Shown here in pieces: positions 32,546 to 50,677 of a stretch of DNA of 64,000 bases. The notes beneath the pieces were generated by a model. It was not told the DNA's origin. It ran no database searches and saw only the letters and a list, made by a program, of their open reading frames with translations. Each line of letters begins with the position of its first letter. Position 1 is the first letter of the stretch. Location of the stretch: assembly GCF_021869535.1 (NCBI RefSeq), contig NW_026262582.1, forward strand, positions 32,364,001 through 32,428,000, read 5' to 3'. Both the position numbers and the translations under genes were made by a program. This stretch comes from Mytilus californianus (taxonomy: Eukaryota).

Positions 32546-33299
32546 TTTAGTACTTAATATTACTTACCATAGTTTGTTAAGTCTTGCTAAGAATCATCAT
32601 AGATAGTCATTGTCAGACAAGAAAGGTGAACATGTTGTTTTGTCCATGGGATGAAACTCCAGTAACATGTGTTTTCAGTTTATCAACTGTAACATGTGTA
32701 ATCACATCCTGCACTTAAATGTGTATATTAATTTACATGTAAACACTTTGTAATAAATTGTACTAGTCAATCTTGAATGCATGATGAGTGAGAAAAAAAA
32801 AGATAACCGTAACTGAAACTTGTGGCCACTAATAGAATCTATAAATGATTCTTATGTATCACAAACTATTTCATATTTCAGAATCTTACTAAATGCAATT
32901 GAAAAACACGTCAGCTATATTAAAACAATTCATGCTTCATCTATTTGGCCACTATATTAAAAAACATACTTTCTTCCATTAAAATATCTTGTCGTCCACC
33001 ATGAAAATTCTATTACAGGGCACAGAAATGACAGCTGTCCAGTAGAATCATATTTCAATAGGAAATCTACTCATACTTCAGGAACAAATAATGTAACCAA
33101 AAAGCTATTTGTGACCTCGCAACCTCGTAATTGAAACCGAATGTATATCAACACCCATGTATTTTGCAGCTATCATCCTTATGTTTTTCAAATTTTGTTC
33201 ACATGTTTCTTTTTTGCAAGAAACGTGAAATTTTACATCTCTGTTTTCTGAAACAAATACGTAATATCCATTGTTTATTAGTTAATTATCCTGATGAAA

Positions 33300-34470: not shown

Positions 34471-36019
34471 TGCTCGCAAATCAAACATTATTTCTTATTG
34501 TAATTTTTTTGTGGATAATAGATCCCGAAGGTTTATACATAATCTAATGGAGAACAATATATGGTAATAACTTGCTGCATTTATATGCATCTGTCCTTAT
34601 ATAGGAGCCTGTTGTTCAATGGTTGCCGTTTGTTGATGTGGTTCATATATGTTTCTTGTTTCTCCTTTTTTATATAAATTATAAATTAGAACGTTGATTT
34701 TTTTCTGTTTGAAATGTTTAACATTAGTCTTTTGTGGCCCTTTATAGCTTGCTCTAAGCGGTGTTGAAGACAAGTCTTTGACCTGAAATTGTTAACTTTT
34801 TATACATAGTGGCTTCTTATTTATATAGACAAAGAACATTTGTAAACTGTATGACAAACAACGTGTTTATCCTCATGATATACTTTTAAATAAAGATAAA
34901 CGTATTAATGAACTGGTATAAGTGCATAATGATGACAAAGTTGAAGCGCATAGTGGACCCCAGATCCAAAGGTAATCAAGTGCTGGTTTCGAAAATTCTT
35001 AATATTACGAAATATTCAGAGTAAACAGGTAATTAATAATTACATGAATTGTGACCATATCAATTATAATTCATGTTAGCATAGAAGTGTTGACTACTAG
35101 GCTGGTGAATCTCGCGGGGAGAAACATGAGAAACATCCAACAGTACTGGCATCGACCGAATGGTGGTAAATACACTCATCATAATTACAAAATTAAACAT
35201 GTGTTTGTCAGACGTGCGTTTCATCCTCAAATGTCTCATGGGATGATTAATACATCCTTAAAGGAGCATTAGATGTTAAACACATGTTCACCACTTTCAT
35301 TCAATTGAATTATAACATACTTAAACGAATGTTTAAATTATAAACAATCTTTAATCAACAATGCATGGGTTCGATGATATGTATCAGTATGTCGTGTGTA
35401 TTTTAGTTTATACGCCATTTAATTAACTATTTAGGTGACCTCCAATAATGTTAACGCCACCATCACTTAATGTACATAATGGATTAGGATGTATATCTCG
35501 CTAACATAATATCATAGTCCGACGGACGAAAAGTGACAACTGCAGATCAAATAGCCCTATCGACATGATGAGCTAAACGAGATACTACATGCACTAATCT
35601 TGTATATGTGTCTGTATTGCTAAGACATTAGTTTCTTTTAAATAGGGTATTGTACACTGCTGTTTATTTGTGTCCTTTCATTGTTAGCTATGATTTTGTC
35701 ATTTCCTCTGCACCATGTTCACCTTGTGAGTTTTTATTCCCATCTAATGTTAACCATCTGTGTATGGTGAATTGAGTCTTCAAATATTCATAATATATGT
35801 TAATACAACTGAAAAGGAAACAAGTCGACTAACACAAGCTTTGTATATTATATTGCTGAGTTTGCCAATTGGTCTATTTTACTAGACTACAACAGTGTTT
35901 CGGTTGATGTCTCAACATCTCCAGTTTGAATCGTAGTGGAGGAAAAATATAATTTGCACAAATGAAGTGCTGTCAATCTTGATTTGATTGGTAGTACGAA
36001 AAAGTAAACAGATACTCAC

Positions 36020-36238
36020 CTTGATTACTAGTAGGTTCGTAAAAATGTAAAGTATCCTTATAAATTTTCCCATATTCCATAAGCTTTTTATACAAATCGA
36101 TCTTCCTAGCATGATATAGCATAGCTTGCAGGAATAAAATGTTATCACGTGCTAATTTACCATTGTCTATTAAATGGCCAAACAGCTGCCATGGCGATGA
36201 AATTTTTTCTAAAACTGAGCTTGGAGATCCATCTTCTC
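36020..36238 (-). CDS. DED-DED gene exon C: rest of the second death effector domain
   Basis: aaacag| and |gtgagt; 219 nt, phase 1 to 1; open: GEDGSPSSVLEKISSPWQLFGHLIDNGKLARDNILFLQAMLYHARKIDLYKKLMEY...HFYEPTSNQ. Not in the ORF track because it has no start codon. Confidence 0.85.
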
Positions 36239-39084
36239 CTGTTTATAACAAATAAATTTAAAACTACACAGAAGCCAATTAAATCGGATGCACCTTAATG
36301 CGTGAATCATAGGTACACATATGATAGTGTGATTTTGAAATGTATCCATTTATTATGTTGTTAACAAAAACGTTGTTTTTCTTATATTTTAAATATTCAG
36401 TTTTCGATTTTGTACAAATAAATTCAAAGCAATTAAATACGTTTGATCTTTAGTGACAAAACAACGTTAGGAATAAATAAAAGATATACGTAATGGCTTT
36501 AAGCTAAATAGGCATCACAATATCTACTACGGTCACCACTGATTAGAAATAATTTGTAGATCTCAAAGTGCTCGCTAATCTTTTTTTACAGGTTCAGAAC
36601 GAGCAAATGCTTTCAATAGAATATTGAAAATAAAGAGTTTACAAATCATCTTTTGAATAAAGGGCAATAACTCCAATTTACGGATCGTTTTTAGCCATTT
36701 GTCCCATTTGTATATATATATATTGCAAAAAAATATACACGGTTAGTGTTTACAGTTTCTGTTCATTAAAAATGTGTCATACCTAATACGTACATGGAAG
36801 AAGAAAAATCTGACAACCCTTGGCACAAATCAAAGGACGATAAAAACAACATAAAACTTTAGACTGAGCAACATAAATCGAACCAAAAAGATTGATTGGA
36901 GGTGCTAAGGAACAGTTGAAATCCAACAAAAGAAATGGAACTCTTTGTTTTGTTAGAGAAGGGGGAAAAAGTCAAACTGGTTTATTTGAATTGTTTACAT
37001 CTGTTACTATGGGCTTTAAAAGTTTCATAAAAGTGCATGATTTAGGATTTTTGGCATCTTATATACGTGTTTTTACTTGAATAATAGTATGGAGCTTCGA
37101 TATATTTGTAAACTTTTAAATCATAGACAAATTTTCATAAAACTGTCGGTTGTGGTAGGTTCAACTCAAAGTGGATCTCTTTTGTGCATAAGCATTAATT
37201 CCGCCAAAAACTTTCAGCAGAAAGATAAAGCATTATTTTGCAGTTCTGACACGGCGATAGTTTTTTGGGAAACGATCCCCAAAATGGCCAATAATTGCAT
37301 CGAAAAGAGAAAGTCGAGTGCACCTTTTTATATTCGGTTGTGTTTGAGTTGACTGTTACGTCTCAAAAACGTTTAAAGCAAAAATATAAGATACATCATC
37401 TCGCTGCAGATTCTTTTATTTTTACATATTTTATATATTTAAGCTACATGTTGATTCAATAAAAATAAAAATTCCCAGTACTTAAGAATGAAATATATAG
37501 GTCAAGTTAAATACCTTTCTAATGAGACATAACAACAGAGTAGGTGTGTTCGAATAACAAATGTTTACTAAAAGTATTTGACGACAGACTTTACAATTGG
37601 GTCTTAAAAATGCATTACTTAAGAAAAAGCTTCATTTTTTGTGTGTGCTATCTAGGGTTATTAGTTTTCAACCTCTAAAAATGTTTAGTCTGCCTTTCTA
37701 GGAAATATTTAATTAGATTTTTTTAAATGCTTTTTAACTTTAGAAAATTCCTCCTGACAACCGGTCAGACAATAGTTTTAAGTTGACTGAATGCAAAAAA
37801 GTACATTAAACGAGGCTCAATAGCTAGTAGATATATTTGTCTTTTATAATACAACTGGCATATAAGGATTGTAATGGTGCTATGTGGATACATTTATCGG
37901 TTTTAAAGAGCTAAATTGGCAGCGCGTCATCCCTACAATGGCTTCCATTTAACGATGGTAAAAATTGACTGGCGTAATGGGGAGATTATTTTGACGAAGT
38001 AGATTCCTGACTGCCTGGTCATTTGTGACACAGATATTTCAAAACGGTCAACCAATTAGTGAAAGCGTCCGTAAAACTTTCCAAAGACTGCACCTATTTG
38101 ACGCCAATTCATTTACATTCAAGAATCCTCGTGAGTAAGGTTATCAATGCCGTCTTCTAGTGGTTGTGGTTGTCATCGTCGTCTGAGTGAGCTGTTGTAA
38201 TAACCAAGAATGCATATCCAGTGCCCAAGACTCGTGATCATATTATTTGACCAGTTACGCATACCGTTTTTCATCTACAGACAGTGCACTTCTTTGTAAC
38301 TTTGGCTTTCTCAAACTCACCTTGTCCATCTTTGTGTGTTATCCTACATTCTAAGCCATAGGGTATCTAGCGCATCTGCATTGAGTCTCAAGTCTTTAAG
38401 CCCTAACACCCATGGTTGTTTAGCTGTTGAGGTCTTTTCTTTGTACTATGCCGATCATTAAATCAAACTGTAGCGTGGTCATGAGTTAAAGAAATGCGGG
38501 TAGGGACAGAGGTCGTCACATACACGATCAGAATTAATTGGAAGCAGGTGCAACGCATGGTGGAGTTCACTTCTTTTTCTAATTGTGTGTGTGACGACTT
38601 CTAGACTTATGTTGTACATTTTTCCATTCTGATTCCGAATCAGCGGTGATTCATAATTATATAATTCAATTCCCCTTTTTAATATTGCATTTCATAACTT
38701 CGGTTAATTTTATCGTCAGTTGCTGCAACATTTGTGCATAGTTTATACATCTTGTGTGATTATTATTTATATAAGATCTGTAAAATCATCAAAATCCATT
38801 AAAAGGAAAGATAATTCAATTATAAATACAGACATCTGACACGCCTACTGACGGAAGAGAAATGAACCTACGGAAGAAGTTTAGCTAGCAATTAAAATAT
38901 GTATATCTGATCAACAGATAAACTTCAGAGTTACAAATATAACAATGAAAAATTTTTAAGTACTCAACAATACCAGTTTAAGATATAACAGGGGAACAAA
39001 TATGTCCCTATAATTACAAACACAAAGACGACACGATCTCTACATCTCTTGTTCATTTCAAAACCCTTAGGTTATTAGACTTAC

Positions 39085-39252
39085 CTTTAAGAATAAAATT
39101 CATTGCGTCTAAATTATTCGCATCTAACTCAAGTGCAACTTTTGTTAACCAAATTTTTAGTTTATAATCTGGACCTGGCGAGTTCAAAGTGTAAGCAGGT
39201 ACTGTCTCTGGAGAACACTTTCCTGGAGAACGACACACTTTTTGATCTAAAA
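39085..39252 (-). CDS. DED-DED gene exon B: linker plus start of the second DED
   Basis: catctag| and |gtaagt; 168 nt, phase 1 to 1; VLDQKVCRS...YKLKIWLTKVALELDANNLDAMNFILK. Confidence 0.85.
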
Positions 39253-41438
39253 CTAGATGAAGCAATGAGAAATACTTTGCTTCAGAGATTTAGCGTCAAT
39301 GTGAGTCTTTTTCTGTTGTCATTTATAGTAAGCATGGTAAGCAGCAGCTAACAATTTAATGCAAACTTCGAAATAGGGTGATAAATTCACTTAAGGATTT
39401 AGAAAACACAAGAAAACAAAATGAAAAGTGCACATCTCAAATATCTGTTAAAAATATTATTTTGTTAAAATTATTTCTTTTGAATGGTTTGGGAATCATT
39501 ATGAATATCTAATTTAATGACATTGTAATCATTCAACAAGCAATAATCAAACAAATAGAAAATTAGGAGTATTAAATATTGAGTAAAGGGATGTCAAATT
39601 CAAAAATGAGCCACTGAGTGTTTTATATTGAGTGACTCAAGTTTCCTAGTTGTACCCTCTGGACCTGAATAAAAGTAAATCCATAGTTATAAAATATGAG
39701 ATAAAAACACACAAAAAACAATCGAGTTTAATATGAAAATTTTAAAGTTTAATACAAGGTGTTTACTGCTATATGCATTGACAATGCTATGCCACTGATT
39801 AAATTGAATACCAGTAGTTCACACTCGTAACTTATCAGATGTGGGGAAACTGTGGCTTATAGTTGTCTACAAACTTTGATGTAAAGTACGGTCCCACCAT
39901 AAATAATACCATATTGCTAACTCGTTAATTATGTTATTATAGATGTAATGTGTATGTGTTAATGAAATAAGTCATGTAACACAAAATCTTACTTTTTCCG
40001 TCGGTTTTAATAACAATCGAAAATCGAATTGAGCTTATTGAATTGCCATTTTGCCTTGTACTTTTGGAGTTATGATTTACCAAAAATAATATAAAATATT
40101 GTTCATGCGCGCTTGATTTGTTTTTAGTTTTCATAGATTGGGAATGACAATCGATTCGTTAAAGTATAAATTAACTTTATTTCCCCCGTGTTATCGGCAT
40201 TAAAATCGTCAATATGGAAGACTGTGTTTCTGGTAAAAAGTCATTTTTTGTAATTCAGATAAAGGAAACATATTTAATATCTTTGTCACAATTATGTTAT
40301 CTAAGCATTGTTAGAACATATTGAAACTCTAAATGTGTAAAGCTTTTTGATGGAAAGAATGAGATGACAGAATGCATTTTCTATCAAAGATAAGTGTATA
40401 TACATTTACATATAACTATGACATTATAGATGAAGGAATAACGTATCTGGCTTCATATACACGTGTATGAGCTTGACGACTTAACCGATTAAAATGTGCT
40501 GTTATTGTCGGTGAAGCGATTATAGTATGCTCCGTTTTTTTACTCCTTATGAATCAAGTGCGCCGCTAAATTATTGTTTGAGACGACCCCGGTAATTTTT
40601 GCTTTCAGAGTCAGAGTCAACAGTCGGAACCGAGACTTTCCGTAAATCTCTTCTACTCATAATAAGTGTTTATTTCACATGACAAAAACGATTCGCAGTC
40701 ACTGAACCATGAAAATAGCAGTGAACTTATGACTGACTGAACCTGCATCACGTAAAGTATATATTTAAGCAAATATCTACAAGATCAAAATAGCAAAACC
40801 ATGTATAATGCTATTAAACATTTATATTACCATTAATTATAATGGAATGCCAGCCAGATGTGTTATCCTTGTAATTGGTAATCAAGTTATCCACATATTT
40901 GTAGATCATATGTTGCTGACCATTTCTCACATATTCAGATTCTGTCAACAAGTCATAGTATTAAATAAAATAGAAAGCTAAAACGCCAAAATGTGTCAAA
41001 AGGACAATTATTTTTATAAGGGAACAATTAATGGTTCAAGCCCTATTATATTTTTGTTGATGTTTCTTTGCTCTTAAATTGTCCATGTAAGGTTTGCACA
41101 TCGGCTATTCATTTTTTTTTCTGTTGTTACGCATACTTAGTAATTTTCACTTTTTTTTCGGCTCGTTTAATTTTCATAAAATTTTGACAAAATATTTACT
41201 TTGACCCTTTGACAAAAATATCAAAATTTCAAAAAACTTGAACCAGACACTTTATTGGAAAAAATTGGTTGGGTACATAGCAGTTTAACAAGCACTAATT
41301 TTGATCATTGAGAAGCTTCATATTTTCTTAACAATAGAACGTGATTAAAACGTTCAGCTGATTTTACAGAGTTATTTCCCTGTAGTGTTATGTACCACCT
41401 TAAGGCAAGATGAGTTAAAAGTTAGGTAGGAAGCTTAC

Positions 41439-41855
41439 CATGAAAAGAGTATGGTACAATTTCTGCTTGTTCCTGAAAGGTAGAGATATCGGATTCCAAT
41501 CTTATTTTGTCTTCAATTGGTTCTATAACGTCTCTAATTATTTTAACATTGATTCCTGATAATGCCTCTTTCAGTTTCTCATATTTTCCTGGTGCTATCA
41601 TATCTTTCCGTTCCAATATGGACAACAGAGATGACATGTCATTTGCAGCTTTGTTATCTTTAGGAGTCAGATTGAATAAACTCCTAAATGATTTGAATTC
41701 ATGTTCATCTATTGTATCGTCTATATGTTCTGTTAGTGTTGTGATTAATCTTCTATGGCTATCTTGTATGGATCTAGAAGAGGTTAACAGTTTTAAATAA
41801 CGATTTCTCAAAATGATACGTCTACTACTTCTTACAATGCAACTAAATTTGTTTG
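41439..41855 (-). CDS. DED-DED gene exon A: first death effector domain
   Basis: Open frame HRRLITTLTEHIDD...DMSSLLSILERKDMIAPGKYEKLKEALSGINVKII, a DED-like helical pattern. Donor catg|gtaagc is phase 1. The acceptor is ambiguous: 41855 (phase 1) or 41842 (phase 2). Confidence 0.8.
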
Positions 41856-42505
41856 CTGATTAATCAATAACGAATCCTAGACCTAGGAGGATATGTGATA
41901 TTCTTATGCAGGAGAATTTCAGACTATAGATATAAAACATTATTGAGAGAGTGATAGAGTAGATTGTTACCCCGAGAAAGTATTGTCGAAGCCAAGATTG
42001 ACAATGATTATTCGGTGGATAACAATCTGCACCATCACCCGATAAGCTATGTGTTATTTATTGTGCTTTACTTTTTTTTAAATGTTATAGGCCATTATTG
42101 GCTTTTAAATTTTAAATTGAAAAGAATTAACTATGATTCCATGTACATTACAACGTTACAGTTATCAAACAACAAAATTAAAGCAAGATGTATCTATATT
42201 TTAACAGTCTAAGAACATGATTTACATTCATTCTTCACATAAAACACGCATCAAATCATAAAATTTCGTTGGTCGATAGCACTTTGTTATATTTTAAATT
42301 CAGTAAATATTACATGTTACTAAAACACTCATGGTAATATGAACAATGATCGACACTTTGAGTTACCTAGGTCCCAATATTCTTTAAAACACGAGCATGA
42401 AACGACCTAATTTGTGGCTTTGCCATATTACTACTGTAACACTATTATAACAATTCATAGTAAGCACTAGTAAATATTTTACCAAACAAATAATAATAAT
42501 CTCAC

Positions 42506-42986
42506 CGCTCTTTTCTTGTGTTGGGCACATCACTACCCCTGTTCTCTAGACTAGATGGGCTGTTTATTTTGCTTGATGTAGGTGACGAAGAACAGGTACT
42601 TATATCATTCAGGAATGGGCCTGAAATGCTGCCACTTAAAGGTTTTGTTGATTTATTTATCAATGGTGATAGATTAAAAGTTGCTGCTCCTGGCACTATT
42701 TGTGAATCAGGACTTAAAACTCCCTTAGATGCATTTATTATTCTTACTTCTATGAATTGTTCTGCTTCAAAATTTAAGTCTGCATCAGAATCTAAATCAA
42801 TGTAATCTCCAACATCGCTGTCGAATACTTGAAGATGTACATCATTTAAATTAAACTTATTTTTCACACTTTCGTGAATGACATTAAAATTTATTCCATC
42901 AGTCACAGATATTTTTTTCCTTCTTTGGCCATAATACAACAAGAAAAACTTTCGCTCCATGATGCATGTAATTGAAATACAATCAC
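42506..42986 (-). CDS. Intact exon encoding a PB1/ubiquitin-fold-like N-terminal domain plus a Ser-rich linker
   Basis: ttttttacag| and cg|gtgaga; 481 nt, phase 1 to 2; ATG at 42960. MERKFFLLYYGQRRKKI...LQVFDSDVGDYIDLD has an N-terminal basic cluster and an acidic OPCA-like motif. The fold is inferred from pattern only. Confidence 0.65.
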
Positions 42987-44388
42987 CTGTAAAAAACAAA
43001 ATCAAATTAACAAATTTAAACAAAATTAATGATAGTTTAAGTCAAACTAAACATGTATATTCAAATGTTACCAGAAAAAGGTTAAGGAACAAAATGTTTC
43101 CAGTTTTCAAGTATCCACAATTATTTTACTTATAGTTTCAAGTCAATACCTGAAGAAACGTGTAATGCTTTTAACATGTTTAAGCCAGATACAGGAGTAA
43201 CCAAATGCGAAACATTACTATACAGTACTGATAACACATGTTCTTTCTACTGTGCGCTTGTACAATGCATCCATTGCATCACCTACATCAAATGGTTAAG
43301 CATGACGAAATTGTGTCCTTAAAGAGGCACTAGCTGTCAAATTCATGTTCACCTATTTGACTCAAATTCTTATACAATGTATTTGATTTATATCCAACGT
43401 AAAACATTTATCCAAATTATAAAAAGTCTAAAATAAACAATTTACAGGGCATGAGCTCGATAATATGTAGCTTCGTTTCGCGTGTATTTTAGTCTTGACG
43501 CCATCTAATTAACTATCGAGTTGACCTCCGAATACCTTCTGGTCATATAAGCGATATAAACATAAATATAGATATAAATATAAAGTGAACTCGTGTTATT
43601 GGATTCTTCTAGGTTTGTTAAATTTTATATTATAGATTAAAAATATATGCTAATCATCGTTTTTACCTGCATAAGAATGAGTTTTTGTGGATTGAATCAG
43701 TAAATTAAATGATTTATCTATGTTTCACTTTCAATGTTGACATTCTTTTCCTTTAAATAATTTTTAAAACACGCACAATGCATGCGTTATCCATCTCTAG
43801 GTAAGGAGTTAAATTAAAGTTCACATGAATACGGATTCAATGAGGTCGAATTATTCACTTGCAAGTGAATAATTCAGCATCAATATTTGTTAGCTTATTT
43901 TAACAAAATTGTTACAAATGTATGGTCTTTTGTCTGAGTCAGAAATTGATTTTTTGGGGTTTTTTTTTCGACGCTATCAATCAAAGTATATTTTTCAGAA
44001 TTTGGATTCAGAATATATTGTTTTTGTCATTTGCATGATCACAATATTTTTTTCCGTCAAATTGGGGATCGGGGTATTATCGATACATTTTTTTTGTTCA
44101 TGTGTTGCTTTTTGATTCATATTAAAACATTAAAATATATATACACTTAACCTACTGTAACATTATCTTTGTTTCTATATACTGTGTAACCCTAAAAGTA
44201 ATAAACCTGTCACAACAATTTAAAAGACATATAACTATGAATTATGCTGCTGATAACAACTTTCTCACACTGAGAGGACAGTTGTACCTTAGTCTTAGAA
44301 CACAAAAATGAAAGGCACTTTATTAAGAAAAAAGGAAAAAAAATATTAATAGCAGTACAAATACACTAACCAATGCAAAACATGATTA

Positions 44389-45640: not shown

Positions 45641-48021
45641 TGCAGGTGCCTCAATTTTTAATTATGAAATATATCTAGTTCCTCGATATTTGATTTTGTT
45701 AATGGTAGAAATTCTAACCCATTCGTCCTGAACATGCATGAAATATTTGCCACTGGTCGTTAAGCAACCAACAATCAATCTAACCCATACAAAAATATTG
45801 GTAACATATATCTTATATATTTGGTATGATGTTGCAGAGTTGAACCCGTTTGTAAACCATCTTCACTAACATCCAGTTCTAGTAGTTTGTGCATTTTTCT
45901 GAGTAGATTTTAACAAATATATTAAACTGTGGGTTAGCATTGATAGATTTTTTTAATAATTTGTCAAGATGAAGTTTTTATCCAACTTTTTTTTTTTAAT
46001 GTAAGAAAAATTATGGATCACCGGACTTTTTTTCACGCTACAGGTTGTGCCAAATTGTCAGATTTTGTATAGATTATGCATTGAAAATCAAATTTTGTGT
46101 GATTAAAAAAATCAAATTTTGTGTTATTAAAAGAAAACTACATGATAGAATTTTAAGATAAAATGTGAGAAGATAGCTCTTATAAAATGCTTTTAGATAA
46201 GAAAAAGAAAAAATGGGGTCACCGAACTTGTTTTCGTGCTACATATCAAAAAAGGTAAATTCACAACACTTTCTATTATAAAAATGACTTTGTCTGAGTT
46301 ATCTCCCCTTATTTGACAAAGTTGAAAAATATTAATCCAACATAAATATGGTGATTTTGAGAAATTTCAGCCGTTATTATGATAAAACACACAATTTTCT
46401 ATATTTACATAAACAGTCTTACACATAAATTACATACTACTTTCAAAATTTGCACATTTCATCAAAGATCTAGACCAACGTTATCTGCTACTTCAAAATC
46501 CAAGATGGAGAAAGACCTTAATAAGCTTTCAAATGATATATAATATAGCCGTATTTTAGGAGGGTGCATTAAAGTCGTTAACTAAGCGTCTTTTAGAAAC
46601 TGTCACTCGTCTACTATGCGACAATCCGTATCTATATCAATTGAATGAACACATTTGTATACGCCCGCGTAAAGACGGGACTAACTATGTTATACCATTG
46701 TCCGTCCGTTCGTCCGTCGTCAACACTTTGGACAATTACTTAAAAATCGATTTTTGAACTTTTTATCTAACTTTGACGAATTGTTTAATTCAATATGCAA
46801 ACCAAATACCATTATCATTTACTTATAATAATCTATTATACCCTTCAACTGATCTTAACACTAACTTTAACATGTAATCTATAATGAAGGAGCAGGGCCA
46901 AATAATCCCAGAAAAAATGAGATGTGCAAATACTTAAAAAAAATGCATACAATATATAATTAACGAACCATTCGTGGTTCCCATTAATTTGACCTAATCA
47001 CAAACTTAAAAATTTAAATCTTGGGATTGTCTTAACTACAAGTCAATAGACCATGACTTAGGTGCGGGGTCAAATAATCTCCATGGAAATGAAGTGCTTA
47101 TACAGCTGCATACCAAATATCATTGATGCAGCATGCATGCCATCCGTGGTTCCACTTTACTTTACCAAATCACAAACTTTACACAAGTGATGACGCCTTC
47201 GCCGACGCGGTCGCAAATAGAATATATAGTCTTGCGTTTTTATTTTATTCAGGCGAATCAATGAAATTGAACAAAGTCGATGCAATTTATCTTACAATGG
47301 TCAATGATGGTTAAACATTTCAAACGGCTTTCAAAGTCAAGATGATAGTTATATAATTTATGCTTGTACATGAGTTTAAAAACAATTAATTAATGCCTTC
47401 TTTAATATCTAACCAGTATAATGCATGACACTGAAGGCCATAAAGTGTTTAAGATGACATAAAATGCTATTGCATGGACAAATGTGTCATGAAGTTATAA
47501 TGAAAAGAATTGTTAAATTGAATCTTACTAGTATTTCACTTTCCTCCTAACAAGAACATTTTAAGTTTTTAGTATTCAAACGACACAAACCACATCGAAA
47601 GTGAAGTAGTCTCGTGTTCGACTCGAGTGCTGAAGTTTTTTTTTTTTTTTTTTTTCATCCCAGACTGTGTCAAATCAAAGATTTGAAAACTTGGATTTGC
47701 TGCTCCTACCAGTATATGGTCGCACGTAGAATTAAGAAAAAAAGGTAAGCTCGAACTTAAAAAATTATGTGTCTTGGTGTGTTGGTTTGGTTTTCTATTC
47801 AGTGATACCTTGTGAAATCACACTTTAAATGTCCGACTCAACGTAATGTTTTAGTACAGAGAAGCGTCATCAACGAAAAAAAAAGTTACAATACGAGATA
47901 AGGATCAACGGGCTATCCAGGTCCAATTTATAATATGCATTATCAAACCAGTCTAAACCAGTCTTGAGTAGTGTTACCAAGCAGTGAGAAAAAAACTTAA
48001 CTTTTTCCCTTTTATACTTAC

Positions 48022-48327
48022 CTTTAAAATTATGTCTCGATATTTTTATCTTCTTTGTTTGTGTTTCAAAGCTATAACGACATTTGTAATTACACTGTAA
48101 GTCAGACTCTGTTACGTTGTTGATCTGCACCTTAAATTGGTTATCATTCTTTACAATCTCGCTATACTTAATTGGATCTATTGGATGGCCATTATAACAA
48201 ATCAGTTCAGGACCTTTTGTCCACTGCCTTATAAGTCCTTGGTCGATAATGTCTACATCAGCAACAGTACAAACTAAAGACAGAGGCTCTCCAATTCGTA
48301 TGACCTCTGGTTCAAATGTCCAAAACA
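48022..48327 (-). CDS. Immunoglobulin-like domain exon
   Basis: cttgcag| and aag|gtaagt; 306 nt, symmetric phase 1-1. LVC (B strand), RQW (C strand) and V.INNVTESDL.CNYKC (E/F strands) give the C-W-C Ig signature. Confidence 0.88.
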
Positions 48328-50677
48328 CTGCAAGAGTTGAGATACTTGAATACAAATACTAAAAGTTGAACCCAGAAGTTTATAGACTTATTATACAATA
48401 CAATTATCAAATAATTCTACATTGTATTGCATCTTAGTTGAGAAATGTTGATATAGATCATGTTGATGGCCATAACTAAATCTGGTATTACGATACATAT
48501 CAATTTTGGAATTTTTTATTTGCAATTTTCTTCAACTTCGTGATTATTTATCCTTCCAATTGTTTTAATTCGAGTGACACTGACTTATTAAACTTGCATA
48601 TCATAAAGTAAAGTACCAAGCGCAAAGTACATAATTTTTGCTCGGAACATCATATCCAGTATTTTGGTTGGTTGAATTCTGAGACAGACTACGATAACCG
48701 TGCTCCAAATTTTTTCTTGGGACTTAATACCCAAAAATTTCGGTACCAAACGATTTGATATCATTTTAAAGAATATGTGTCTTCCTTTATCATGTTACTT
48801 ATGTGTGTGTCGTTTTTTATTACTGAGCTGATACATGTAGTAATATAAGGCTTAAAGTTTACTCTACAGATTCAAAAAAGGCATAAGACATTACAGGATT
48901 TAATTGATGCATAAATCACGTCTTCTATTTTCATTTAAATAATTGTCATGAATGGTTTCTTTACAACTTAATGAACAAACAATTTCATTAGTTTTAGAGC
49001 TTTTCACCCCGAATGAACGGTAAAAAACGAAAGTATTTTAAAGCAAGTGCTAACTTTAAAAAAAATCTGCGGAACGGTTATAAATTTTTGAACAACGAGC
49101 TCTGTTTTACATTTTTTAACATTGGAACAGAATTAACATGGTCATCAGTTTGACATTGATGAAAACATGATAAGATCGACATGATTACAATGCAAAAATG
49201 GTATTTATACCCGACCCTATACTCAACTGTAAACACATTTTTTGTGCATTTTATTTGTACATGTTTAGGTCGAAACATGTCTCATTTCTTAACAAATTTA
49301 GGTTGACCAAAGCATGGAAAGTGTTTAGAATTGTGCGCAGGATATTGTTTAGTTTACAAAAAGTAGTGTTTAAATGTTAAACACATTAATTCTAACACAC
49401 ATTTTAAGTGTTTCTATTTAAGACAGGTGTACATGTTTTAAATGTTCTTACTTAAAACTTACCCGGAAACACGTTTAGAAATACACATGACCACAAGGCC
49501 GATTTTTACAGTGTTGCTAAAAAGGGAAAACCATCGACGCCTCATAAATTTCATATAATGTCCAGATATGTATGACTAATTTTGTACGCACTCAGACTGT
49601 TTATTGGTTTCAAACAACGTAGCCAGAACCCAAAATATTAGCAAATTAAAAGTGATTCTAAAATATCTTTTTCTGTTTTACTTTTCTTTAGATACATACC
49701 ATTCGCACTTAATGTGTCTATTATGTGGAACAACAATAAACTCAACTGGATATTATATCGTGCCATTTAATCTGTACCTATAATCACAAAAGAATAATAT
49801 TTAATTTTTATGAAATATAACATGGAAGAGTCTAGCTGGTAAAAAGTTTATTAACGCCTATACTGAATTTATGAATAGTAAAATTATAAACAAACAGTCC
49901 CGTAATCTTCAAGACACAGACAGAGAACACCTACACAAAGACACACTCAACATGCATATCTTGCCAATTCCTTGTACGCTTTTACCCGAATTTTCGACGA
50001 TTTCAAGTTGAAAAGTGACAATTTCTTACTTTTCGTTTTCTATAAAAATAATTTAACTTACGTTACTAAAGGGGTTGTTTGTTTTTGTTTCTAGAAATAT
50101 AAAGTATAAAAGTTCATCTTCATTCCATTTAATTGATAAACATCTATATTTCATAAAGACAAATGTGCGATGTACATAAGGGTTTATTTGAGGACAATGG
50201 GAATTTACGACAGTTTGAAAGGTAATAAAACGATTTTCTAGATATCTTTTTATCAATTTATCTATGACTAGCAGAAACTAAGAAATTTGAACATCGAACC
50301 GACTGCTAACAGCCCGGTTAACAGCCGGTTGGATATTTCATATCGAATAACGAATAACGAACCGGCTGCTAACTTCACATCCATCTTCTTTCTCAAGATT
50401 TTCGGTCTAAGAAAAAACTTTAACTTTCTAAGTATGTTTGATCGGATATGAGCTTTCATTTCGTTTGCATTTTGATTGAACGAGTAGACCAATGGAGGTA
50501 AACACGAGAATGCGTGCTCAAATATCTGAACATGCAGTAAATGAAACTTATTTAAGAAGCAAATTCGAAGTTTTGTCACAAATTGCGATTTTGAAGTTTA
50601 ACCAAAATTTTAAACATATCCGTCAAAACCTGTATCTTGGCATTGCACAAGGTCATGTGTTTCTCTGGCGTCTTCTT

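What the first reader, a model, noticed from the sequence alone, without database searches (positions are those of the whole stretch)
36020..41855. Tandem DED-DED gene that is invisible as a whole in the ORF track and lacks its own start codon
Three minus-strand exons (41439-41855/41842, 39085-39252, 36020-36238) have canonical splice sites and matching phases, and splice into one open frame with two death-effector-like domains. Tandem DEDs are the prodomain design of caspase-8/10 and c-FLIP, which form DED filaments. No caspase (QACxG) exon was found downstream in the window, and the first ATG in exon A lies inside DED1, so an upstream exon is required. The exons are read from the sequence; the DED identity and an immune/apoptotic role are inferred.
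Basis: partly seen in the sequence, partly recalled or inferred. Interest (0 to 1): 0.72.

Follow-up and report, generated by a model that had tools for sequence, protein, structure and literature searches.

The report
Mussel PB1-like, two-DED adaptor gene
The three exons are real and belong to a five-exon California-mussel gene that codes for a ubiquitin-like/PB1-like head, two death effector domains and no caspase; it is already in the databases as an uncharacterized, only partly modelled gene, so it is a modest refinement and not a discovery.

Summary
The window is Mytilus californianus chromosome sequence. All three donor sites, the phase-1 junctions and both DEDs hold up. Two 5' exon boundaries needed correction. 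Exon A starts at 41773, not 41855/41842. The conserved acceptor of exon B puts its start at 39246, not 39252.

The missing start codon lies in an upstream exon, 42506-42986 (ATG at 42960). This exon codes for a beta-grasp, PB1-like domain and joins exon A in phase 2. A fifth exon, 33105-33247, ends the frame with a stop that the homologues share. There is no caspase domain here or nearby.

The complete five-exon reading frame is 437 codons. RefSeq models this locus (LOC127718719, 265 aa) only as the head plus DED1. Its model stops early because it uses another acceptor at 39444, inside an insertion found only in this copy. The full design is modelled for the paralog LOC127717933 (436 aa) and for M. 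galloprovincialis VDH90378.1.

Exons A-C are under purifying selection (dN/dS about 0.3). RNA contigs confirm exon A and its acceptor. No RNA read tested the A/B or B/C junctions.

The most likely function, by inference only, is a non-catalytic DED adaptor or FLIP-like modulator. The gene is a new variant within the known bivalve expansion of DED genes.

The parts
42506..42986 (-). Exon 1: short 5' leader, ATG at 42960-42958, beta-grasp (PB1-like) domain and a Ser-rich linker; GTGAGA donor after 42506, phase 2
   Evidence: Sequence. Identical to residues 1-151 of RefSeq XP_052080734.1 (P0002). Pfam PB1 17-19 bits, below the cut-off. The fold of the paralog matches the NBR1 PB1 at Z 7.5 and ubiquitin-likes at about Z 7.
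41439..41773 (-). Exon A: DED1 (Pfam match at 41542-41727) plus a linker; acceptor AG at 41775-41774; donor GT after 41439, phase 1
   Evidence: X1 contigs cover 41440-41774 with 0 mismatches and carry unmatched letters upstream. P0002 residues 153-263 are identical. DED 23.3 bits. VIA Z 11.2 to the FADD DED on the paralog model.
39437..39444 (-). Start of the alternative exon used by the RefSeq model: acceptor AG at 39446-39445; it reads D, I, then stop (TGA 39439-39437) and cuts the protein off after DED1
   Evidence: This is the only site in 20000-41439 that gives the 'DI stop' ending of P0002. It lies in sequence absent from the paralog and from L033/L034.
39370..40881 (.). A 1.5-kb insertion in intron A/B, specific to this copy and partly a dispersed repeat (about 40019-40651); it holds the alternative acceptor
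   Evidence: L033 jumps from 40882 to 39369 of the window within 15 bases. Genome-wide repeat hits fall on query positions 231-863.
39085..39246 (-). Exon B: linker plus the first third of DED2 (about 39086-39169); conserved acceptor AG at 39248-39247.
   Evidence: Same junction as in P0034 and P0003.
36020..36238 (-). Exon C: the remaining two thirds of DED2 (Pfam match at 36069-36227), with the K-I-D-L form of the RxDL motif; phase 1 at both ends
   Evidence: DED 36.8 bits, above the cut-off. Whole-genome scan hit. 85% identical to the paralog exon.
33105..33247 (-). Exon D: last coding exon, 47 codons then TAG (33107-33105); a truncated remnant of the domain that follows DED2 in paralog P2
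   Evidence: Conserved acceptor and phase. Same C-terminus as P0034 and P0003. 76-89% identity.
32982..33127 (-). Out-of-frame remainder of the P2-type domain, now past the stop codon (two frameshifts relative to P2)
   Evidence: Three-frame comparison with P1 and P2.

Best explanation
The three exons are the middle of a five-exon minus-strand gene of Mytilus californianus, LOC127718719. Its exons are E1 42506-42986, A 41439-41773, B 39085-39246, C 36020-36238 and D 33105-33247. The complete frame of 437 codons codes for, in order: an N-terminal beta-grasp (PB1-like) domain; a Ser-rich linker of about 70 residues; DED1, closest to the single DED of Mytilus 'caspase-8-like' caspases; a linker of about 43 residues; DED2, FADD-like, with an F-I hydrophobic patch and a K/R-x-D-L motif; and a short tail left over from a truncated domain. 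There is no protease domain.

The gene belongs to a small Mytilus-specific family. The older paralog P2 (LOC127717781, 677 aa) starts inside the DED1 exon and continues into an intact post-DED2 domain and a long C-terminal region. A duplicate gained the PB1-like first exon, a module also carried by a roughly 9-kb Plavaka-like transposon family. That duplicate lost the C-terminal part through a frameshift, and then duplicated again to give P1 and the window copy.

Inferred mechanism, not shown: a soluble, non-catalytic DED protein that joins FADD / DED-caspase assemblies through homotypic DED contacts. It would either dampen them in the manner of short FLIP, or couple them through its PB1-like head to another scaffold.

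In this particular copy, an extra acceptor at 39444 in an insertion found only here can cut the product down to head + DED1. That is the only form RefSeq models.
For: Gene structure: canonical sites and matching phases at all four junctions. P0002 is exactly E1 + exon A. P0034 (paralog, 436 aa) and P0003 (M. galloprovincialis, 392 aa) carry all five parts with the same junction residues and the same stop. X1 transcript contigs stop and start at the borders of exon A.

Constraint: dN/dS is 0.29 against L033, 0.32 against P1 and 0.40 against P2 over exons A-C, with no stops.

Domains: Pfam DED. The AlphaFold model of P0034 has DED1 at pLDDT 97 and a beta-grasp head at about 70. VIA gives Z 11.2/11.1 to the FADD and caspase-8 DEDs and 7.5 to the NBR1 PB1. 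The top 13 Foldseek hits of the DED2 model are all DEDs, with TM 0.69-0.74 to FADD. By sequence, DED2 aligns to the FADD DED at E 8e-4, with the F-L patch and RxDL aligned.

No caspase.

Relatives of DED1: the next relatives in the genome lie beside caspase exons, and P0013/P0019/P0021 are DED+caspase proteins.

Transposon link.
Against: No RNA read or contig supports the A/B, B/C or C/D junctions in this species. The RNA-seq run X4 (6% sampled) has zero depth on exons A, B and C. X1 covers exon A only. The only public model of this copy ends after DED1 (P0002). The function is entirely inferred. The long DED1-DED2 linker differs from true tandem-DED proteins. The PB1 assignment is below threshold.
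Confidence: 0.7

Rival explanations
1. In M. californianus this copy no longer makes the two-DED protein. Splicing from 41439 to the acceptor at 39444, which the insertion brought in, gives a 265-aa PB1-like + DED1 product or a transcript destined for nonsense-mediated decay. Exons B-D would then be an intact but unused relic, with the paralog LOC127717933 carrying the full function.
For: RefSeq's single model P0002 ends 'D-I-stop' using exactly that site. The acceptor lies in a 1.5-kb insertion absent from P1, L033 and L034. X1 contigs cover exon A at depth about 5 but not exons B or C.
Against: Exons B, C and D have no stop, frameshift or damaged splice site. dN/dS is 0.19-0.36 for these exons against L033. 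X1 has no contig on the 39444 exon either. Contigs at depth 5 are patchy, and the alternative acceptor does not exclude use of the conserved one.
Confidence: 0.25
2. It is the prodomain of a caspase-8/10-type initiator caspase whose catalytic exons lie further downstream, beyond the exons the reader found.
For: The two-DED order resembles the caspase-8 prodomain. The more distant relatives of DED1 in this genome lie next to caspase exons.
Against: Exon D ends at a stop shared by P0034 and P0003. No Peptidase_C14 match occurs on this chromosome between 25.1 and 66.9 Mb. None occurs near paralogs P1 or P2 either.
Confidence: 0.03
3. The DED exons are the cytoplasmic tail of a signal peptide-Ig-TM receptor encoded by upstream exons at 47.8-53.3 kb (the scan's other note, s1-302755).
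For: A minus-strand ORF at 47870-48355 has weak Ig matches (E 0.003-0.006).
Against: The acceptor of exon A is phase 2 and matches the phase-2 donor of exon 1, which has its own ATG. RefSeq P0002 and paralog P0034 both start at that ATG. The acceptors at 41855/41842 that this model needs are not used in the X1 contigs.
Confidence: 0.02

Closest known systems
Short c-FLIP and viral FLIPs (e.g. MC159): caspase-less two-DED regulators of FADD/caspase-8 assemblies
   Same: Two DEDs and no active protease. The models match solved FLIP, MC159 and caspase-8 DEDs (Z 10.0-11.1). DED2 keeps a hydrophobic patch and an RxDL-like motif.
   Different: There is an extra N-terminal beta-grasp domain and a roughly 43-residue flexible linker in place of a rigid tandem unit. 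It is not orthologous: its DED relatives are Mytilus-specific. No functional data exist. Vogeler et al. 2021 (PMC7836458) state that no FLIP homologue has been identified in bivalves.
Bivalve 'caspase-8-like' caspases with one DED (Mg8-like, F2XEW8/ADZ24779; P0013 cluster)
   Same: Its DED1 is the closest caspase-linked relative of the window's DED1 (43% identity, E 4e-11). Both use a DED coded by a single exon.
   Different: Those proteins carry a Peptidase_C14 domain with a QACRG site. The window gene has none.
Lineage-specific expansions of DED + TRADD-N adaptors in bivalves (DEDD2/NCOA6 clades; Kaur et al. 2021, PMC8195603)
   Same: A DED followed by a small domain and a variable tail, expanded in sessile marine invertebrates. 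In paralog P2 the region after DED2 resembles TRADD-like_N clusters by language-model features (0.82, a lead only).
   Different: Pfam TRADD-like_N does not match the exon D region of the window or of P2. In the window gene that domain is cut to 47 codons.
FADD
   Same: By sequence and fold, DED2 is most like the FADD DED (E 8e-4; TM 0.69-0.74).
   Different: There is no death domain, but there is a second DED and a PB1-like head.
PB1 scaffolds (NBR1, p62, MEKK2)
   Same: The N-terminal domain is a beta-grasp whose best structural matches include the NBR1 PB1 (Z 7.5/7.4), and Pfam PB1 is its best family hit. It has an acidic D-x-D-x-G-D...D-S-D-x-D-L stretch where PB1 domains carry the OPCA motif (my own comparison from memory).
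   Different: The score is below Pfam's cut-off. Ubiquitin, SUMO and UBX score almost as well (Z about 7). A family profile finds no PB1 among PDB sequences.

Membership tests
Death effector domain (Pfam PF01335, death fold) | Profile score at or above the curated cut-off (35.9 bits) | tested here: met
   DED2: exon C alone scores 36.8 bits; the whole DED2 in homologue P0003 scores 66.2 bits. DED1 alone is below the cut-off (23.3 bits, E 7.7e-5).
Death effector domain (Pfam PF01335, death fold) | Six-helix bundle that superposes on solved DEDs | tested here: met
   Tested on paralog P0034, not on the window's own joined product. DED1 has pLDDT 97, Z 11.2, rmsd 1.5 A over 84 of 87 residues of the FADD DED, and the top 26 rows are all DEDs. 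DED2 has six helices, pLDDT 67, and its top 13 Foldseek rows are all DEDs.
Death effector domain (Pfam PF01335, death fold) | RxDL motif and a hydrophobic F-L type patch | tested here: inconclusive
   DED2 has F-I at the FADD F25-L26 position. The window has K-I-D-L where paralogs have R-I-D-L. DED1 has S-L at the patch, and its RxDL equivalent is unclear.
Caspase-8/10 | Peptidase_C14 catalytic domain after the DEDs | tested here: not met
   No PF00656 match within tens of Mb on this chromosome. The frame ends in exon D.
FLIP (c-FLIP short / vFLIP) | Two DEDs without an active caspase | tested here: met
FLIP (c-FLIP short / vFLIP) | Compact tandem-DED unit with a short rigid DED1-DED2 connection | tested here: inconclusive
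   About 43 residues between the DEDs, pLDDT under 50. Alignments to whole tandem-DED chains have rmsd 17-18 A. The model's confidence for DED2 was low.
FLIP (c-FLIP short / vFLIP) | Binds FADD/caspase-8 DEDs and blocks caspase activation | not testable with these tools
   Needs binding and cell-death assays.
PB1 domain (PF00564) | Profile score at or above the cut-off (23.6 bits) | tested here: not met
   16-19 bits, E 0.001-0.01, and only for the window's own protein among five family members.
PB1 domain (PF00564) | Beta-grasp fold closest to PB1 structures | tested here: inconclusive
   NBR1 PB1 at Z 7.5/7.4 tops this domain's rows, but ubiquitin-likes reach Z 7.0-7.3, and Z under 8 is common by chance.
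DED + TRADD-N adaptors | A TRADD-N (RRM-like) domain after the DED | tested here: inconclusive
   PF20694 gives no match at exon D of the window or of P2. The Atlas feature score of 0.82 to TRADD-like_N clusters is only a lead. The window keeps only the first 47 codons.

The most novel reading that the evidence does not exclude
This Mytilus family would be the first bivalve counterpart of FLIP. It is a caspase-less two-DED protein that tunes activation of the mussel's DED-caspases. Its added PB1-like head is related to a module carried by a Plavaka-like transposon, and could tie DED assemblies to PB1-type scaffolds. That would join two polymer-forming modules in one adaptor.
Probability: 0.2. 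Interest if true: 0.6.

Novelty: new variant of a known kind. Interest (0 to 1): 0.35.

Why it matters
Bivalves have many DED, death-domain and TRADD-N genes, but no FLIP-like brake on DED-caspases has been reported in them (PMC7836458). A caspase-less two-DED protein with an extra interaction head is a concrete candidate for that role. It is also a small worked example of how such adaptors are built: a first exon shared with a transposon, loss of the C-terminal domains by frameshift, tandem duplication, and an insertion that offers a truncating splice site.

In practice, the result corrects the public model of LOC127718719. The locus holds an intact 437-codon frame, not only the 265-aa product. 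Nothing here is surprising in kind to a specialist in invertebrate cell-death genes.

Tried and rejected
RNA test of the junctions. The single read-laying run (window 35990-41989) gave zero depth on exons B and C in all four runs, so the A/B and B/C junctions remain untested. Exon 1 and exon D lay outside the 6,000 letters allowed.

Word-based protein searches. The search with exon A found only a genomic fragment (P0001/L033). The search with the DED2 region found only family members.

PB1 by sequence. phmmer and a family profile against PDB sequences found no PB1.

TRADD-N for exon D. There were no Pfam matches.

Foldseek with the whole 436-residue model gave no match at E <= 0.001. The domain-level VIA alignment and a separate DED2 model were needed.

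The look-up of encoding contigs could not return the RefSeq locus for P0002.

I rejected the acceptors at 41855/41842, the caspase-downstream model and the Ig-receptor model (see rivals).

Joined step left out. The exons were searched one by one by reference, and the database proteins P0002, P0034 and P0003 served as whole-protein proxies.

I did not run complex prediction, because I had no Mytilus FADD or caspase partner sequence in hand and the binding claim is only inferred. The window has no N stretches, and I took no contig for human.
Full report
**Where the window comes from.** It is G000:C2:32364001-32428000 of a 1.65-Gb genome with 33% G+C. Exact protein matches identify the genome as Mytilus californianus.

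**Checking the observation.**
- On the minus strand, the three stretches are open in one frame each.
- They end at GTAAGC (after 41439), GTAAGT (after 39085) and GTGAGT (after 36020). Each leaves one extra base, so all junctions are phase 1.
- Pfam DED scores 36.8 bits on exon C alone (cut-off 35.9) and 23.3 bits (E 7.7e-5) on exon A. The part of DED2 in exon B is too short to score alone.
- A six-frame scan of the whole genome with PF01335 recovers both sites, at window 36069-36227 and 41542-41727.
- A scan with Peptidase_C14 finds about 150 caspase exons in the genome. None lies on this chromosome between 25.1 and 66.9 Mb.

**Corrected exon borders.**
- *Exon A.* Contigs of run X1 cover exactly 41440-41774 without a mismatch. 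X1 behaves as a transcriptome: it has no depth on unique intron sequence, and its contigs end at the exon borders. The contigs then carry 12 and 61 letters that do not match the stretch upstream. The acceptor is therefore the AG at 41775-41774 behind a C/T-rich tract. Exon A starts at 41773 in phase 2, not at 41855 or 41842.
- *Exon B.* The AG that gives a start at 39252 exists only in this copy. The paralog and two related Mytilus loci read AA at that position. The AG six bases further on, giving a start at 39246, is conserved in all four. It is also the one used in the database proteins.

**The missing ends of the gene.**
- *Upstream.* The ORF at 42502-43023 has an acceptor before 42986, an ATG at 42960 and a GTGAGA donor after 42506 that leaves two bases. 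This matches the phase of exon A and makes an Arg codon across the junction.
- A search of 1.8 billion representative proteins with exon A returned RefSeq XP_052080734.1 (P0002, 'uncharacterized protein LOC127718719', 265 aa). It is letter for letter exon 1 + R + exon A, followed by D, I and a stop.
- That ending comes from an acceptor at 39446-39445. It is the only site in the region that can give it.
- *Downstream.* Comparison with two paralogs on the same chromosome revealed a conserved exon at 33105-33247. The paralogs are P1 at 31.39-31.41 Mb and P2 at 22.87-22.89 Mb. The exon has a phase-1 acceptor and a TAG stop.
- The five exons sum to 1,314 bases, or 437 codons plus the stop.
- The same five parts, junction residues and stop are found in RefSeq's model of P1 (P0034, LOC127717933, 436 aa) and in M. 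galloprovincialis VDH90378.1 (P0003, 392 aa, N-terminally incomplete). M. coruscus has a homologue whose model runs into a Mutator-like transposase fragment (P0035).

**Is it a live gene?**
- A related Mytilus genomic contig (L033) and both paralogs keep exons A-C open with the same splice sites.
- dN/dS over these exons is 0.29, 0.32 and 0.40.
- In this species, however, transcription is shown only for exon A. The RNA-seq run X4, about 6% of it sampled, has no reads on exons A-C. X1 has no contig on exons B or C, nor on the 39444 exon.
- The 39444 acceptor lies in a 1.5-kb stretch (39370-40881) that L033, the M. galloprovincialis locus and P1 all lack. Part of that stretch is a dispersed repeat.
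- So this copy may make the full protein, a truncated head + DED1 protein, or both. I keep this open as the main rival.

**What the protein is.** P0002, P0034 and P0003 stood in for the whole product.
- *Overall model.* An AlphaFold model of P0034 built on a 20-sequence alignment gives the order: beta-grasp head (residues 4-76, pLDDT about 70), a disordered Ser-rich linker, a six-helix DED1 (pLDDT 97), a low-confidence linker of about 43 residues, a six-helix DED2 (pLDDT about 50) and a short tail.
- *DED1.* It aligns to the FADD DED at Z 11.2 (rmsd 1.5 A, 84 residues) and to caspase-8 DED2 at Z 11.1. All top 26 rows are DEDs.
- *DED2.* Folded alone it reaches pLDDT 67, and its top 13 Foldseek rows are all DEDs (TM to FADD 0.69-0.74). 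By sequence it aligns to the FADD DED at E 8e-4, with F-I at the F25-L26 patch and R/K-I-D-L at RxDL.
- *Head.* It matches the NBR1 PB1 at Z 7.5, but ubiquitin-like domains score nearly as well. Pfam PB1 stays under its cut-off, and a family profile finds no PB1 in the PDB. I call it 'beta-grasp, PB1-like'.
- *Tail.* It is the first 47 codons of a domain that is intact in P2. The remainder survives out of frame past the stop. That P2 domain resembles TRADD-like_N clusters only by language-model features (0.82) and not by Pfam.

**Relatives and history.**
- Beyond the three paralogs, the next relatives of DED1 are the single DEDs of Mytilus 'caspase-8-like' caspases. Examples are the P0013 cluster, which includes F2XEW8, and the loci on C88 and C24 that sit beside caspase exons.
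- The relatives of DED2 share its phase-1 intron, and none lies near a caspase hit.
- P2 (P0005, 677 aa) has its own ATG in the DED1 exon, no PB1-like exon and a long C-terminal region.
- The PB1-like exon, with its acceptor, ATG context and donor, is also present in a repeat of about 9 kb. The copies are 68% identical to it in DNA and broken by stops and frameshifts. The repeat copies themselves are 94-98% identical on several chromosomes. The repeat also carries a weak Plavaka-type transposase match.
- Which side captured the exon from the other is not resolved.

**Comparison with what is known.**
- Vogeler et al. 2021 describe bivalve caspase-8 types with two DEDs, with two DEDs plus a death domain, or with one DED. 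They state that no FLIP homologue has been identified in bivalves (PMC7836458).
- Kaur et al. 2021 describe large bivalve expansions of DED + TRADD-N adaptors with variable flanks (PMC8195603).
- The window gene fits that landscape as a caspase-less two-DED adaptor with an unusual head. It works most like a short FLIP or an adaptor. It is not a member of the caspase-8 or FLIP orthologous groups.
- The scan has met other Mytilus DED genes on other DNA, and its notes on this same window proposed the PB1-like + DED + DED model.

**Verdict.** The gene is real and largely already in public databases. The borders have been refined and the full frame recovered. The function is inferred only.

Noticed in passing
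L037:6614-10000 + L038:1-5841 (G000:C13:14.29 Mb), and copies on C13:65.27 Mb, C165:4.11 Mb, C2:40.94 Mb, C24:41.60 Mb: A repeat of about 9.2 kb, 94-98% identical between chromosomes. It has a C2H2-like N-terminus and a weak Plavaka-type transposase match (21 bits). It carries a stop-ridden copy of the gene's PB1-like exon, complete with acceptor, ATG context and donor.
   Followed up: partly
window 41160-41404: A short repeat in intron A/B that is very abundant in all four RNA runs (depth in the thousands in contig runs), with many variant letters and loose ends. It is a dispersed, transcribed element and not part of the gene.
   Followed up: no
window 47870-48355 (-): A 161-aa ORF with weak immunoglobulin-domain matches (E 0.003-0.006). 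It is probably a separate gene or relic upstream and is not joined to the DED gene.
   Followed up: partly
G000:C2:22.869-22.886 Mb (P2, LOC127717781, P0005): A 677-aa paralog: DED-DED, an intact small post-DED2 domain (possibly TRADD-N-like), then about 330 residues of mostly helical sequence with no Pfam match.
   Followed up: partly
P0035 (M. coruscus), residues 380-494: The public model of the M. coruscus homologue leaves the family after DED2 and runs into a Mutator-like transposase fragment (28.9 bits). This is probably a mis-joined gene model.
   Followed up: no
P0014 (760 aa, from the representative search): A protein with a DED, a weak ZU5 match and three further DED1-like repeats. 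It shows that this DED subtype is reused in other multi-DED architectures.
   Followed up: no
G000:C154:55531084-55531954 (+): A DED2-type split DED exon followed 550 bases later by a weak TRADD-like_N match (17 bits, E 6.6). This hints that the DED2 subtype is normally followed by a TRADD-N-like exon.
   Followed up: no
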